Origin: Thecamonas trahens ATCC 50062
Lineage: Eukaryota; Protista; Apusomonadida
Length of the DNA stretch: 64,000 nucleotides
NCBI RefSeq assembly: GCF_000142905.1
Contig: NW_013657664.1
Span: forward strand, 474,445 to 538,444
Direction of reading: 5' to 3'
Positions 40,501 through 45,525 of this stretch are shown here, in pieces; position 1 is the stretch's first letter, and each line of letters begins with the position of its first letter. The position numbers and the translations under genes were made by a program. The notes beneath the pieces were generated by a model. That model was not told where the DNA came from, made no database searches, and saw nothing but the letters and a program-made list of their open reading frames with translations.

Positions 40501-41621
40501 ACGAGTTTGACATGCGCGTGCTTGTGACGTATCTCGGTAAGATGTTCAACGGCGGAGTGATTTCCGGGCGCGGTGGCGGCGAGCTAGTGCCCGGAATGCG
40601 GATGCCAGCGAGCGGAAGTTTGGCCGAGGCGCGAGAGGCTGTGGCGCGGCTGCCTGAGGCGGACGAGCCAGGCGTGTTTGGCTTGCCGGCCAACATCTCG
40701 CGCGCGGTGGAGCAGGCGCGGAGCGCCGAGGTGATTGCGCAGCTCAAGGCGCTCGGGACGAGCCAGGGCAGCAGCTCGGGCTTTGACCGGGTGAGGTGGG
40801 CCAAGGGCCTCGAGGCTGTACTGCAGCAGTGGGCGGGCGCGACGAGCTCGTCGGGCGTGCTTGACCTTGTGGCCGGAGGCGGGAGCGGCAGCAGCGGGCG
40901 GTCGCCTGTGGCGGCGTTCCTAGAGCTCGAGTTTGTGCAGGCGATGGAGCTTGTGGAGCTCGTGGACGGCGTGCTTGGCGAGGTTGTGGAGGTGCTTGAG
41001 GAGCGGCGGCTTGTGAGTCCTGCGATTGTGGAGCTCGTGGAGGGCTCGCTGCTCTCGGGGAGCGTGCCCGAACCGTGGTTTGCACGGTGGGAGGGCCCGC
41101 TGGAGCTTGGGGCGTGGCTGGGCGAGGTTGTGCGACGGACGGTTGCGGTGAGCGAGTGGCGGAGCCGTGCGCGGGCGTCGCTGGAGACGCTGCTGCAGGA
41201 TGAGCTTGTGCTCTCCGAGCTCTTCCGGCCGGGCACGTTCCTTAACGCGGTGCGGCAGGAGAGCGCGCGCAAGCTCGGGGTGGCTATGGACAGCCTTGCG
41301 CTGGTCTCGTCTGTCCGGCAGCAGCAGTGGGTCGGCACGATTCGCGTGGGCGGACTCCTGCTGCAGGGCGGAAGCTACTCGGGCGGGCGCGGGGTGCGGC
41401 TTGCAGATGCCACGACACCGTCGTTTGCGGCGCTCGGCTCGTTGTACATGGCGTGGGTGCCCGAGGCCGAGGCCGCCGAGTGGCGGGCGCGGATTGCGGG
41501 CGTGCCGCTGTACGAGGACGGCAGCCGCGACAAGATGGTGGTGGAGGTTGGCGTGGAGGTGGAGGGCGGCGAGGTGTCGGAGTTTGTGCTCGCCGGCCTC
41601 GCGGTCTTCCTTCGCGAGTAA
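28573..41621 (+). CDS. DYNC2H1: Cytoplasmic dynein-2 (IFT) heavy chain, ~4350 aa, intronless, frame break at ~37801
   Basis: LRQVAAFYN, HWNQQLYKALEYQY, FPRFYFIGDDDLLEILGQ, GPAGTGKTES, CFDEFNRL, HYDWGLRA, GPSGSGKS; second ORF carries stalk, AAA5 and AAA6 (LKNLHL, GWSKFYEFS). Confidence 0.95.
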
Positions 41622-41631
41622 AGCAAAACGG

Positions 41632-43437
41632 TCACGGAATGGCGAGGTCGACGATGCGAAGGAGCGAGGAGGAGCGGGCGAGTGTGAAGCGGAGCGGCGA
41701 GCTGGTGAGGGCATCGGCAAGCGGCGGGAGGAGGACGGCGAGGGCCGGTTCGTGCGGTGGGATCCAGCCGAAGAGCTTCTCGATGAGGAGCGGCGAGGAG
41801 AGGAGGAAGGAGATGGTGGGCGCGAGGTTGATGATGATGGGGCGGTACTGGAGGCGGGTGAGCGGAGTTGTGGCTGCGGCGGTGAAGACGCAGCCGAGCG
41901 GACAGGAGACGACGGCGTTGTCGTCAGCGACGACGGCGACGCCGCAGCCAGCACACACACGCTCGGTGACGAGGTGGCGGGCAAGGGCGTCGTCGAGGGT
42001 GAGCGGCGGGGCATCGTGAGCGCTGTGCGGAGGGACGACGGCGATGGAGGAGACTGTGGCGATGAGAGTATAGCTGGTGACGCGCGGGGCAGCGGCGAGA
42101 GATGCGGCGAGGGCGGTGACGCTGGTGATGACGGTGTCCGAGTTCCGGCAGAGAGGCGCGTCTTGGCGGAGCGAGGGAGAAAAGGCGGCAGCGAGTCGGG
42201 AAGCGGCGGCGGCGGCAGAAGATGGTGTGGCAGGGATGATGGAGGTGTGGGCGGTGGTAGAGAGGGACGGCGCGGCGGCGGACCATGCTGCGGACCGCGA
42301 CCAAGTGACGGCACAGCAGGAGGCGGCGACGATGGCGCCGGGAACGAGGAGCGGAGCGAGGGAGGGATGAGCGACGGTGAGCCAGGCGGTGGCGAGGGCA
42401 CCGTCGGCATTCACCGAGCCGTCGATGACTAGGACGCGGAGGAGGGAGGACGGTGATGCATTGACGAGTCGGACGACGCGGATGGCGTCGAGGTGGACGA
42501 GGGTGTCGAGCTGGAGGTGGGCGAGGAGCGGGGTCGCAAGGAACGGGCGCGAGAGCCAGTGAAGGTCGGCCATCCACGGGGCTGTGGCATGAATGGCGAG
42601 CGGGAGAACGGTGACGGCCGAGGATGGAGCGCGTGTGGCGAGGGTGGGCACGCCGCGCCACTCGCCGACGACGAGGGCCTTGAAGCGGGCTGCGGCGCCG
42701 CGCGGGAGGATGTAGACCCAGGAGGCCGCACGGCCCCAGAGAGTGACGCGGGTGGGGCGTAAGGCCGTGGAGGCGTCGACGAGCGAGACGGTGGCACGAT
42801 GGACGGTGGCGCGGCGGGTGGTGGTCTCGATGACGCCCGAGACGGCGACGACAACCCCGCGTACGTTGACAGTGGACGCAAGGGGAGCCGCCGGAGACGC
42901 GAGGGCGGCGAGCGGAGTGAGGGGATGGTCGGGGTGGAGCTCAGTGCACGGTGACGATAAAGGCGGATCGGCGGGCGAGGAGGGCGAGGAGGAGATGGAC
43001 TCAATGGCGTCGTCGTCCGAGTCGAGATCGAGGCGCGAGGGAGGGCGAGACGATGGTGGCGAGGACGGGTCCGGGAGGAGGTGGAAGGAAGGAAAGGAGA
43101 ACTGGGTGAGGCCGGCAAAGGTGTCGGTGATGGAGGTTGTGGCCGGATGCGAGATTGTGGTCGAGACAGAGCCGGCGATGGTTGCCGAGTCATCGACAAG
43201 AACCGTAGGCTGTGGAGAGTGAGTCTCGAGAATGGGGTCGGCAAGGAGCAGCGGCTGGGAGAGCGACGAGAACGGTGTGGCCATGGCGAGGGGGTGGTGC
43301 CGCTTGGGGGACGGCGGTGATGTGATGGGGTCGGTGACGGTGGTAGTGGTGGTAGGGATCATCCATTTGGTGTGGGATGGTGGTGGTGGTGCCTCGCGTG
43401 GTGGCTGCTTGCGCTTGCGGGTGGTCGGGGTGGGCAT
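41632..43437 (-). CDS. SHLD2: SHLD2/FAM35A-like triple OB-fold ssDNA-binding protein
   Basis: ATVSLVDAS...VTLWGRAASW; LAHLQLDTLVH; CAGCG...DDN...CPLGC...YRP...LIEKLF. Confidence 0.7.
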   Translation of the reverse strand: MPTPTTRKRKQPPREAPPPPSHTKWMIPTTTTTVTDPITSPPSPKRHHPLAMATPFSSLSQPLLLADPILETHSPQPTVLVDDSATIAGSVSTTISHPATTSITDTFAGLTQFSFPSFHLLPDPSSPPSSRPPSRLDLDSDDDAIESISSSPSSPADPPLSSPCTELHPDHPLTPLAALASPAAPLASTVNVRGVVVAVSGVIETTTRRATVHRATVSLVDASTALRPTRVTLWGRAASWVYILPRGAAARFKALVVGEWRGVPTLATRAPSSAVTVLPLAIHATAPWMADLHWLSRPFLATPLLAHLQLDTLVHLDAIRVVRLVNASPSSLLRVLVIDGSVNADGALATAWLTVAHPSLAPLLVPGAIVAASCCAVTWSRSAAWSAAAPSLSTTAHTSIIPATPSSAAAAASRLAAAFSPSLRQDAPLCRNSDTVITSVTALAASLAAAPRVTSYTLIATVSSIAVVPPHSAHDAPPLTLDDALARHLVTERVCAGCGVAVVADDNAVVSCPLGCVFTAAATTPLTRLQYRPIIINLAPTISFLLSSPLLIEKLFGWIPPHEPALAVLLPPLADALTSSPLRFTLARSSSLLRIVDLAIP

Positions 43438-43576
43438 CGCCCCCAAAAAAGGTCGTGGTTGGTCCGGCCGAGGGAAAGCAGAGAGTGGCGTGTGCGGGTT
43501 GTGTGTCAGGTTTGATCAAGGGAGGGGAGAGGGGAGGGAGGGGGAGAGGGGTACACTTGGCTTGGGTGTGGATACC

Positions 43577-45525
43577 ATGGCTTCGCTAACAGCGGTGGTG
43601 GGCTTGTTGCAGGAGCGGGATGCTCGGCAGTCTGCACGGTGGGCGCCTCTCATTCATCGGCGTATGTGGAGATGTGAAAGGGAGGCGGGAGGGTGCGGGG
43701 AGAGGGAAGGGGGGGTGTAGGGGTGGGTGGGGGGGGTAGGGGTATGGGGGCGGGGAAAGGGGGGGAAGGGGGGGGGTGGTGGGTGTGTGTGAGAGGTTCT
43801 GTACTCATAGGTATGTGTCGGTGTGGTGGTTGGCTGTGTGTGGTTGGCTGGGTGTGGTTGGCTTGGGTGTGGTTGGCTTGGGTGTGGCGGCTTCACGGGA
43901 GAATAGACTCGGTGCTGGTGGCACAGATGGAGAGGATGCGGACGCGGAATGCACAGCTGGAGCACATGCTGCGAAACGCAGGGAGTGGGTCGCCGGCAGG
44001 GACACCGAGCGGAGGGATGGGGGGCGGCGGGGCAAGCTCGGGGAGCGCGACAGGCGGGCTTAATGGATCAAGCTCGGCGGGCGACGCGATGGCGGTGGCG
44101 CAGCTGCAGGCCAAGGCCAACGAGCTCAACGCAGAGCTCAACGATCGGTACAAGGAGCTACTGAACACGCAGCAGGCGCTGCGGGCGGCTGAGGAGGGCC
44201 TCGCTGGGAAGGAGAGCGAGCTGGAAGCGGCCAAGGCGCGGATTTGCGAGCTGGAAGCGCAGCTCGAGCGCATGGCGCGCGAGAAGGAGACGTCGGACGT
44301 GACGTCGATGGCACTCGGCGACGAGCTGAGGCTGCTGCAGATGGAGCTGATCCGAGTGGAGGAGGCGAACTCGAAGCTGAAGGAGGAGAACGAGGAGCTT
44401 GTCTCGCGGTGGCTGCAGAAGGCCGCCGAGGACGCCGAGAAGCTCAACGAGGCGAACATGTTCTACCAGTCGATGGTGAGCCAGCGCGAGTCGCTCGAGT
44501 TGCAGGCAGCAGCGGTGAGCAACGTGACCGGAACGGTCGACATGTCGGGCTCGGGCGAGTCGCTGCTGGACGCGATGGCCGGAGCGTCGTCGTCAAGCGG
44601 GGCGTACAGCGGGTCGGGCTTTGTTGTGGTCCCCACGCGGGCGCGGCGGACCGTGGCAGCGCATGGGGGCGAGGGTCACTCTGTTGGATACGCGCCCAAC
44701 TCGGACATGCTCGCGACTGGCGGGTCGGACAAGGCCATCAAGCTCTTTGATGCGCGGTCTGGTGAGCACCAGTTCTCGCTCCGCGGCTACTCGGCGGCGG
44801 TCTACTGCACGCGGTTCTCGCCGACGGGAGAGTTTGTACTCGGCGCGTCGGCTGACGAGTCGATCCGGGTCTTTGACGTGGCGACGCAGCGGCCGCGGCA
44901 CACGCTCACGGGCCACACGGCCAAGATCTACGCGGCTGACTTTTCGACCGACGGCTCGCTTGCGGTCTCGGGCTCGCACGACCGAACGCTCAAGGTGTGG
45001 GACCTCGCGCGTGGGTACTGCTCGCGGACCATCATGTGCTACTCGTCGTGCAACGATGTGTCGGTCTCGATTGACTCGGGCGTGGTCGCGTCGGGCCACC
45101 ACAACGGGACGGTGGCGTTCTGGGACACCCGGTCCGGCGACGTCTCGCACATGATCAAGGGCGCGGCGTCGAAGCAGGTGACGTGCGTCGAGTACTCGCC
45201 CGACGGCGACTCGCTGCTCATCAACTCGCGCGATAACTGCCTCACTCTCTTTGACACCCGGACCCACCAGGTGGCTATGACCTACGAGGCGCAGGGCTTT
45301 TCGACCGGACTCAACTACGCGCGGGCGACGTTCTCGCCGGACGGCGCGTTTGTGGCCGCAGGCTCTGCGTCTGGCGAGGTGTACGTGTGGAACGCGGCGT
45401 CGGGCGCACTCACCACTGTGCTCGAGGGCGGGCACACGGCTGCGGTGGCGTGCGTCGCCTGGCGGCCGAGCGGGCGGTCGCTGGCCTCGCTCTCGCGCGA
45501 CGGCGGGCTTGTGGTGTGGGAGTAG
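43577..45525 (+). CDS. ATG16L: Autophagy protein ATG16 (coiled coil + WD40); exons 43577-43661 and 43907-45525
   Basis: N-terminal LQERDARQ helix, LGDEL...LKEENEELVSRWLQKAAEDAEKLNEAN, WD40 repeats including VSGSHDRTLKVWDL. Confidence 0.9.

What the first reader, a model, noticed from the sequence alone, without database searches (positions are those of the whole stretch)
41632..43450. Shieldin subunit SHLD2-like gene in a unicellular eukaryote
A disordered N-terminus precedes three OB folds with SHLD2-like motifs in order: ATVSLVDAS..VTLWGRAASW ~ ATVTVIDQS..VFLWRTAAFW; LAHLQLDTLVH ~ LEHLQPDVLVH; LSTTAHTS ~ LHTTPWSS; CAGCG..DDN..C..C..YRP..LIEKLF ~ CAKCG..DEN..C..C..YRP..LIEKIL. An in-frame FLGAMP just before the first ATG resembles the N-terminal F(W/L)GAP motif, so the true start may be upstream. 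Shieldin is usually described as a late animal innovation linked to 53BP1 and class switching. A protist ortholog would point to an ancient end-protection or fill-in role.
Basis: partly seen in the sequence, partly recalled or inferred. Interest (0 to 1): 0.8.

Follow-up and report, generated by a model that had tools for sequence, protein, structure and literature searches.

The report
Divergent RPA70-like OB-fold protein, SHLD2 unproven
[quoted passage not shown] Its resemblance to the animal DNA-repair protein SHLD2 is only a weak, below-threshold signal that could not be confirmed here.

Summary
The window is Thecamonas trahens. The minus-strand ORF 41632-43446 (604 aa, first ATG at 43437) is uninterrupted. 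Its third-codon-position GC content (GC3, 0.80) matches neighbouring genes. It is 28-36% identical along its ordered region to one other protein, P0002, from a marine sequencing run (E 1.9e-25).

Only the first ordered domain could be classified. It matches Pfam REPA_OB_2 (26.5 bits, cut-off 27; P0002 27.9) and aligns to DBD-B of Thecamonas RPA1 (hhalign E 8e-5). SHLD2_OB1 is the second and only other hit (15.8 and 21.1 bits, cut-off 26). Thecamonas RPA1, POT1, CTC1 and a fourth OB protein do not hit SHLD2_OB1.

The second and third domains hit no Pfam family, including OB_SHLD2_2nd and SHLD2_C. A conserved C-2X-C-13X-C-3X-C motif sits where an RPA-type zinc ribbon would. AlphaFold failed (pLDDT 32-33), so no structural test was possible. 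No SHLD2 sequence was available by reference.

REV7 and SHLD1 were not found in the genome. CTC1 and a RIF1-like gene were.

Verdict: a new RPA70-like multi-OB protein. SHLD2 orthology is possible (about 0.3) but not shown. The public gene model AMSG_04109 is truncated.

The parts
41632..43446 (-). Whole ORF, 604 codons plus stop (stop at 41632-41634). First ATG at 43435-43437 (residue 4); further Met at residues 29 and 55.
   Evidence: GC3 of 0.80 matches neighbouring genes. Homologue P0002 at E 1.9e-25.
42880..43446 (-). N-terminal low-complexity, probably disordered tail (res 1-189). 48% Pro+Ser+Thr, a basic RKRK patch at res 10-13, an acidic DLDSDDD patch, and two S/T-Q sites (res 63, 114).
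   Evidence: Composition. No Pfam hit. No homologue covers it, because P0002 is cut off by the end of its contig.
42577..42879 (-). OB-A (res ~190-290), an RPA70 DBD-B-like OB fold with the VTLWG...W motif.
   Evidence: REPA_OB_2 26.5 bits and SHLD2_OB1 15.8 bits. P0002 equivalent: 27.9 and 21.1 bits. hhalign to DBD-B of Thecamonas RPA1: probability 61%, E 7.9e-5. The six-frame genome search gives the same hit.
42172..42576 (-). Second ordered domain (res ~291-425), a candidate OB-B, with conserved L..L.LDT..H, DGS..DG, AVTWSR.A.W and TAHT motifs.
   Evidence: 31% identity to P0002. No Pfam, PDB or RPA1 match. The OB fold here is inferred, not shown.
41635..42171 (-). Third ordered domain (res ~426-604), a candidate OB-C with a 4-Cys insertion and a conserved LLPPL C-terminal segment.
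   Evidence: 28% identity to P0002. No Pfam or PDB match. Only non-significant zinc-ribbon-level alignments to Thecamonas RPA1 and CTC1.
41890..41955 (-). Putative zinc ribbon: Cys498, Cys501, Cys515, Cys519 (C-2X-C-13X-C-3X-C).
   Evidence: All four Cys are invariant between the two family members, with identical spacing. The spacing differs from RPA1 (C-4X-C-13X-C-2X-C) and MEIOB (C-2X-C-10X-C-2X-C) as given in PMC4830875.
42429..42477 (-). A 49-nt GT...AG 'intron' in the public gene model AMSG_04109. It shifts the frame and ends that model at 274 aa.
   Evidence: P0001 equals res 55-323 plus SSTAR and a stop. The stretch is coding in the alignment with P0002, with no gap.
43438..43449 (-).
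   Evidence: It is the only F[WL]GA in all six frames of the window. It precedes the first ATG and lacks the Val7/Ile9-type strand residues described for human SHLD2.

Best explanation
This is a genuine, mis-annotated Thecamonas trahens gene for a highly divergent member of the RPA70-like class of multi-OB single-stranded-DNA-binding proteins. It belongs to none of the named subfamilies by the tests available.

Shown:
- An intact 604-codon ORF conserved along its ordered region with one marine-protist homologue.
- A first ordered domain that is an RPA70 DBD-B-type OB fold.
- Four invariant cysteines in the last domain.

Inferred:
- The second and third ordered domains are also OB folds, the last carrying a zinc ribbon. 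Together the three bind ssDNA in the manner of RPA70 DBD-A/B/C.
- The ~190-residue disordered tail recruits partners or is a site of regulation.
- The genome has a separate canonical RPA1, POT1 and CTC1, so this protein is most likely a specialised ssDNA-binding scaffold. It would act at resected ends, gaps or recombination intermediates rather than as the replicative ssDNA binder.

It works like SHLD2, MEIOB or SPIDR in its build. SHLD2 is the nearest specific family, but only on weak, below-threshold evidence.
For: - ORF, motifs and coding signal.
- Sole homologue P0002, E 1.9e-25, identity 36/31/28% over the three ordered segments.
- OB-A: REPA_OB_2 26.5 bits (ours) and 27.9 bits (P0002, over the cut-off of 27). 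Same hit in the six-frame genome search. hhalign to DBD-B of Thecamonas RPA1, E 7.9e-5.
- Language-model neighbours of both proteins are all multi-OB ssDNA-binding families (POT1, MEIOB, CTC1/SHLD2, CDC24, SPIDR). First-hit scores are 0.96 and 0.95, with 194 and 188 shared features.
- Four invariant Cys with fixed spacing.
- Separate canonical RPA1 (164 bits), POT1 (76 bits) and CTC1 (49-51 bits) exist in the genome.
- No paralogue of this gene in the genome.
Against: - OB-B and OB-C match no Pfam family, no PDB chain and no Thecamonas OB protein.
- Both AlphaFold runs failed (pLDDT 32 and 33), so the fold of two thirds of the ordered region is unverified.
- The window's own OB-A score is 0.5 bits under the Pfam cut-off.
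- The language-model 'recognition' values (2084 and 1933) are below the level at which that tool's scores count as strong evidence.
- 'Belongs to no named subfamily' rests on searches of limited reach. Library-wide E-values over 1.8 billion proteins hide any relative scoring below about 50 bits.
Confidence: 0.5

Rival explanations
1. It is a true orthologue of shieldin subunit SHLD2. Its three C-terminal OB folds would bind the ssDNA of resected breaks, and its N-terminal tail would tether it to upstream factors, in a protist sister to animals and fungi. This would make the subunit far older than the vertebrates to which it is currently assigned.
For: - SHLD2_OB1 is the only Pfam family besides REPA_OB_2 that matches. 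It does so in both family members at matching positions (15.8 bits, E 0.012; 21.1 bits, E 2.6e-4).
- Thecamonas RPA1, POT1, CTC1 and the C10 OB protein do not hit it.
- The build (long disordered tail, ordered domains, 4-Cys motif in the last) is that described for SHLD2 (PMC6003645).
That is a lead, not a tested result.
- CTC1 and a RIF1-like gene are present.
- F[WL]GA occurs once in six frames of the window, at this ORF's start.
Against: - All SHLD2 profiles are below cut-off or silent: OB1 below 26 bits; OB_SHLD2_2nd and SHLD2_C give no hit, by hmmscan or by six-frame search.
- REPA_OB_2 outscores SHLD2_OB1 in both proteins.
- No SHLD2 appeared at E <= 0.001 in 1.84 billion representatives.
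- REV7 was not found: HORMA hits are MAD2 and a HORMAD only.
- The only SHLD1_C hit (13 bits, E 1.7) is on the antisense of a better ORF.
- FLGA lies before the first ATG and lacks the Val7/Ile9 strand residues.
- The literature reports SHLD2 only in vertebrates, and shieldin as absent from yeast, fly, worm, zebrafish and frog. Orthology would therefore need many losses.
Confidence: 0.3
2. It is a MEIOB-like meiotic RPA1 paralogue that binds ssDNA at meiotic recombination intermediates.
For: - MEIOB and hold'em clusters are ranks 2-6 among the language-model neighbours of both proteins.
- MEIOB also has three OB folds with a zinc motif starting C-2X-C.
- The genome has meiotic genes such as a HORMAD.
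- MEIOB is known from Capsaspora and fungi, so it is old within or near this part of the tree.
Against: - No OB_MEIOB_N hit in this protein, in P0002 or anywhere in the genome, whereas Thecamonas RPA1 itself gives a weak one.
- The zinc-motif spacing differs (13X and 3X, against 10X and 2X).
- MEIOB has no N-terminal extension, whereas this protein has about 190 residues.
Confidence: 0.1
3. The ordered region beyond OB-A is not OB-fold DNA-binding protein at all. Under this reading it is a lineage-specific protein with one OB fold and unrelated C-terminal domains, or the spliced 274-aa product of the public model is the real one.
For: - No profile, PDB or structural support for residues 291-604.
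- The public annotation predicts a frame-shifting 49-nt intron.
Against: - Conservation with P0002 runs without a gap through the supposed intron and on to the C-terminus, including four invariant Cys and several Trp.
- GC3 stays at 0.83 across residues 190-604.
- Whole-protein language-model neighbours are multi-OB proteins of similar length.
Confidence: 0.07

Closest known systems
SHLD2 (FAM35A, shieldin subunit 2)
   Same: - Long disordered N-terminal part followed by ordered C-terminal domains, with a 4-Cys motif in the last.
- Weak but specific SHLD2_OB1 match on OB-A in both family members.
- CST and RIF1-like genes are present in the genome.
   Different: - All three SHLD2 Pfam models are below cut-off or silent.
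- The tail is about 190 residues. Human SHLD2 is 904 aa and its OB-fold region was modelled from residue 402.
- Cys spacing is C-2X-C-13X-C-3X-C.
- No REV7 or SHLD1 was found, and there is no demonstrable REV7/SHLD3-binding N-terminal strand.
- It comes from an apusomonad, whereas SHLD2 is reported only from vertebrates.
RPA70 (RPA1), DNA-binding domain B (Pfam REPA_OB_2)
   Same: - Best profile match of OB-A (26.5 and 27.9 bits).
- hhalign E 7.9e-5 to DBD-B of Thecamonas RPA1.
- Shared TLWG motif.
   Different: - No Rep-A_N, no tRNA_anti-codon-type DBD-A and no Rep_fac-A_C match.
- A disordered tail replaces DBD-F.
- The canonical RPA1 is a separate gene on contig 59.
- Zinc-motif spacing differs.
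MEIOB
   Same: Three-domain RPA1-like build of about 430-470 ordered residues, a zinc motif starting C-2X-C, and high language-model similarity.
   Different: No OB_MEIOB_N match, different Cys spacing, and a long N-terminal tail that MEIOB lacks.
CTC1 C-terminal OB folds (CST complex)
   Same: - A local resemblance of the zinc ribbon to Thecamonas CTC1 (C.GCG ... C..GCV; hhalign E 0.09, not significant).
- One Atlas cluster mixes CTC1 and SHLD2 annotations.
   Different: No CTC1 Pfam match. Thecamonas has its own CTC1 on contig 26.
SPIDR
   Same: A disordered N-terminus plus three C-terminal OB folds with a zinc ribbon, as described in PMC11377751. DUF4503 clusters are among the language-model neighbours.
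   Different: No DUF4503 Pfam match.

Membership tests
SHLD2 (shieldin subunit 2) | First OB fold matches Pfam SHLD2_OB1 (PF21669) at or above 26 bits | tested here: inconclusive
   15.8 bits, E 0.012 (window). 21.1 bits, E 2.6e-4 (P0002). Both are below the cut-off and below REPA_OB_2, but four other Thecamonas OB proteins give no hit. The six-frame genome search found none.
SHLD2 (shieldin subunit 2) | Second OB fold matches Pfam OB_SHLD2_2nd (PF22779) | tested here: not met
   No hit at E <= 10 in either protein, whole or cut into pieces, nor in the genome.
SHLD2 (shieldin subunit 2) | C-terminal OB fold with 4-Cys zinc ribbon matches Pfam SHLD2_C (PF15793) | tested here: not met
   No SHLD2_C hit. 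Four invariant Cys are present, but such a ribbon is shared with RPA1, MEIOB and CTC1.
SHLD2 (shieldin subunit 2) | N-terminal strands that bind REV7-SHLD3 (Val7, Ile9, Phe10, Trp11 and others in human; PMC7181697) | tested here: inconclusive
   F-L-G-A is present but lies upstream of the first ATG and is preceded by Pro/Arg rather than Val/Ile. The homologue lacks its N-terminus, so conservation cannot be judged.
SHLD2 (shieldin subunit 2) | Partners REV7, SHLD1 and SHLD3 encoded in the same genome | tested here: inconclusive
   - HORMA hits are MAD2 and a HORMAD only; no REV7.
- SHLD1_C: 13 bits, E 1.7, on an antisense ORF.
- SHLD3: no profile was on hand.
- CTC1 and a RIF1-like gene are present.
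- The six-frame search is exon by exon, so absence is not proven.
SHLD2 (shieldin subunit 2) | Reciprocal best match with vertebrate SHLD2 | not testable with these tools
   Forward searches found no SHLD2. No SHLD2 sequence could be obtained by reference, so neither the reverse search nor a direct alignment was run.
RPA70-like OB-fold ssDNA-binding proteins | At least one OB fold of the RPA DBD type (Pfam REPA_OB_2, cut-off 27 bits) | tested here: met
   P0002 OB-A 27.9 bits. Window OB-A 26.5 bits by hmmscan and 26.3 in six frames. hhalign to RPA1 DBD-B, E 7.9e-5.
RPA70-like OB-fold ssDNA-binding proteins | Tandem OB folds ending in a zinc-ribbon-bearing OB-C | tested here: inconclusive
   The 4-Cys motif is conserved and the language-model neighbours are all multi-OB families. 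There is no profile hit for OB-B or OB-C, and both models failed.
Canonical RPA1 | Rep-A_N, DBD-A, DBD-B and Rep_fac-A_C all present | tested here: not met
   Only REPA_OB_2 matches. The canonical RPA1, with all of these domains, is on contig 59.
MEIOB | OB_MEIOB_N (PF24903) and a C-2X-C-10X-C-2X-C zinc motif | tested here: not met
   No OB_MEIOB_N hit. The spacing here is C-2X-C-13X-C-3X-C.

The most novel reading that the evidence does not exclude
The protein is a genuine SHLD2 orthologue in Apusomonadida. The ssDNA-binding subunit of shieldin would then predate the split of apusomonads from animals and fungi, and would have been lost or diverged beyond recognition many times. It may originally have worked with CST (present here), perhaps without REV7, SHLD1 or SHLD3.
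Probability: 0.3. Interest if true: 0.8.

Novelty: new variant of a known kind. Interest (0 to 1): 0.45.

Why it matters
Shieldin is treated as a late vertebrate addition to the 53BP1-RIF1 pathway. A bona fide SHLD2 in an apusomonad would move the origin of end protection by a dedicated ssDNA binder to before the animal-fungal split. It would also offer a minimal system for asking what SHLD2 does with CST alone.

Even if it is not SHLD2, this is a conserved RPA70-like protein with only one detectable relative among the 1.84 billion cluster representatives searched. It sits in a genome that also keeps RPA1, POT1 and CTC1, so it adds a further specialised ssDNA binder to the known set.

In practical terms, the public gene model AMSG_04109 is truncated to 274 aa and hides two thirds of the ordered region.

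Tried and rejected
- **Word-indexed protein searches** returned only self hits. Ala/Pro-rich words swamped the candidate list; even P0002 was missed.
- **Exhaustive phmmer**: only the gene's own public model and P0002.
- **Metagenome scans** by peptide patterns and by a VTLWG....WVY DNA pattern: only chance matches.
- **PDB sequence searches** with the protein and with profiles of the whole region and of each domain: only linker or chance hits.
- **AlphaFold2** on the two-sequence alignments, with either protein first: mean pLDDT 32 and 33. I did not run fold search, because such models give meaningless matches.
- **hhalign** of OB-B and OB-C against Thecamonas RPA1, CTC1, POT1 and the C10 protein, and against OB-A: nothing significant.
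- **SHLD1 candidate** on contig 10: rejected as antisense noise.
- **REV7 search** by HORMA profile and by MAD2 protein: only MAD2 and a HORMAD.
- **Complex prediction**: not used, because no partner candidate justified a binding claim.
- **Literature**: no report of SHLD2 or MEIOB in Thecamonas.
Full report
**Source and gene.** The window is contig 16 (474445-538444) of Thecamonas trahens ATCC 50062, an apusomonad and sister lineage to animals plus fungi. The identification rests on the public protein AMSG_04109, which is encoded at this locus. On the minus strand there is an uninterrupted ORF at 41632-43446 (604 codons counted from a mechanical TTG). The first ATG is at 43435-43437, and further Met codons are at residues 29 and 55.

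The ORF lies between the 3' end of a dynein heavy chain gene (+ strand, stop at 41621) and an ATG16-like WD40 gene (+ strand). GC at third codon positions is 0.80 in this frame (0.76 in the tail, 0.83 in the ordered part). The two neighbours have 0.80-0.87, and the other two frames of this ORF have 0.60-0.65. The gene is therefore real.

**The observation.** The first ~190 residues are 48% Pro+Ser+Thr and match nothing. The SHLD2 halves of the motif pairs could not be checked. No SHLD2 sequence could be obtained by reference from any tool, and I did not type one. The pairs agree with my own recollection of human SHLD2, but that is a lead, not a test.

**Relatives.**
- An exhaustive phmmer of residues 180-604 against 1.84 billion representatives gave two hits at E <= 0.001. 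One was the gene's own truncated public model. The other was P0002 (463 aa, 32% identity, E 1.9e-25) from a Logan assembly of run ERR868368.
- The P0002 ORF runs off the 5' end of its 1.7-kb contig, so its lack of a tail says nothing. Its locus is also GC-rich.
- Identity between the two proteins is 36%, 31% and 28% over the three ordered segments. Invariant Trp, Gly and four Cys occur throughout.
- Three word-indexed searches, two metagenome scans and a search of the genome itself added no further member and no paralogue.

**Public gene model.** AMSG_04109 (274 aa) equals residues 55-323 followed by SSTAR and a stop. This is produced by a predicted 49-nt GT...AG intron at 42429-42477 that shifts the frame. 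The alignment with P0002 runs through that stretch without a gap and on to the C-terminus. The unspliced 604-codon ORF is therefore the conserved product, and the public model is truncated.

**What the domains are.** Only the first ordered domain can be classified.
- It matches Pfam REPA_OB_2 (RPA DBD-B type) at 26.5 bits in the window protein and 27.9 bits in P0002; the cut-off is 27.
- It matches SHLD2_OB1 at 15.8 bits (E 0.012) and 21.1 bits (E 2.6e-4); the cut-off is 26.
- hhalign aligns it to DBD-B of the Thecamonas RPA1 (probability 61%, E 7.9e-5).
- The second and third domains match no Pfam family in either protein, whole or cut into pieces. That includes OB_SHLD2_2nd, SHLD2_C, Rep_fac-A_C and OB_MEIOB_N.
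- They also match no PDB chain and no Thecamonas OB protein.

Three things suggest that these two domains are OB folds:
- The four invariant cysteines (498, 501, 515, 519; C-2X-C-13X-C-3X-C) sit where RPA-type proteins carry a zinc ribbon.
- The secondary structure in the two models is strand-rich, although those models are unreliable.
- The language-model neighbours of both proteins are all multi-OB ssDNA binders: POT1, MEIOB/hold'em, CTC1/SHLD2, CDC24 and SPIDR. First-hit scores are 0.96 and 0.95. The tool's own 'recognition' value is low for both queries.

Both AlphaFold2 runs on the two-sequence alignment failed (pLDDT 32 and 33). No structural comparison was made.

**SHLD2 or not.**

For SHLD2:
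- SHLD2_OB1 is the only family other than REPA_OB_2 that either protein touches, at matching positions.
- As controls with the same composition, Thecamonas RPA1, POT1, CTC1 and a fourth OB protein on contig 10 do not touch it. RPA1 does pick up weak CDC24 and MEIOB hits.
- The build (disordered tail, ordered domains, 4-Cys motif in the last) is that described for FAM35A/SHLD2.
- CTC1 and a RIF1-like gene are present in the genome.

Against SHLD2:
- Every SHLD2 profile is below cut-off or silent, and REPA_OB_2 outscores SHLD2_OB1.
- The language-model neighbours rank POT1 and MEIOB above the CTC1/SHLD2 cluster.
- No REV7 was found. The HORMA hits are MAD2 on contig 51 and a HORMAD on contig 3.
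- The single SHLD1_C hit (13 bits, E 1.7) lies antisense to a better ORF.
- The literature places SHLD2 in vertebrates only, and reports shieldin as absent from yeast, fly, worm, zebrafish and frog.

**The N-terminal motif.** F-L-G-A is the only F[WL]GA in all six frames of the window, which is curious. However, it precedes the first ATG, and an in-frame stop lies 30 codons upstream with no ATG between them. The residues before it are Pro and Arg. The human SHLD2 strand that binds O-REV7 and SHLD3 uses Val7, Ile9, Phe10 and Trp11. I treat the motif as unsupported.

**Other identities.**
- Canonical RPA1 (contig 59), POT1 (contig 11) and CTC1 (contig 26) are separate genes, so this protein is none of them.
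- MEIOB is the main named rival. There is no OB_MEIOB_N signal here or anywhere in the genome. The zinc spacing differs from MEIOB's C-2X-C-10X-C-2X-C, and MEIOB has no N-terminal tail.

**Conclusion.** The safest reading is a new, very divergent RPA70-like multi-OB protein with a disordered tail. It probably acts as a specialised ssDNA-binding scaffold. I give 0.5 to it belonging to no named subfamily, 0.3 to true SHLD2 orthology, 0.1 to MEIOB-like, and the rest to other readings.

Noticed in passing
window 42429-42477 (-): The public model AMSG_04109 removes a 49-nt GT...AG stretch. This shifts the frame and truncates the protein to 274 aa. Homology with P0002 shows the stretch is coding.
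   Followed up: yes
window 41621-41634: The dynein heavy chain ORF (+ strand, AAA_9 to Dynein_C domains) ends at 41621. That is only 10 bp from the stop codon (41632-41634) of the minus-strand OB gene, so the two convergent genes must share or overlap their 3' untranslated regions.
   Followed up: no
L003:388-2427 (-) = G000 contig 10, about 335.3-337.4 kb: A 679-aa ORF with a below-threshold Rep_fac-A_C match (24.5 bits, res 222-308) and no other family. This is a further unassigned zinc-ribbon OB protein in the genome. It is not related to the window gene by hhalign.
   Followed up: partly
L004 (contig 11), L012 (contig 26), L027 (contig 2), L005 (contig 3), L007 (contig 51): Thecamonas encodes POT1 (76 bits), CTC1 (49-51 bits), a RIF1-like protein (Rif1_N, 27 bits, in a 1392-aa open frame), a HORMAD/Hop1-type protein and MAD2. 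No REV7 turned up in a HORMA-profile search or a MAD2-protein search of the genome.
   Followed up: partly
L007:900-1240 (+), upstream of the MAD2 HORMA exons: An open frame that runs into the MAD2 gene crosses a dinucleotide-type microsatellite (it translates as runs of YT and HI) and a Pro-rich stretch. This is probably 5' UTR or intron rather than coding sequence.
   Followed up: no
window 42001-44000: GC skew on the + strand peaks at 0.45 here. This fits the minus-strand gene being built largely of C-rich codons (Ala, Pro, Ser and Thr make up 49% of residues).
   Followed up: partly
L001:1455-1682 (+): The Logan contig carrying P0002 has a second called ORF 45 nt after the stop. It looks like non-coding 3' sequence called by a prokaryote-style gene finder.
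   Followed up: no
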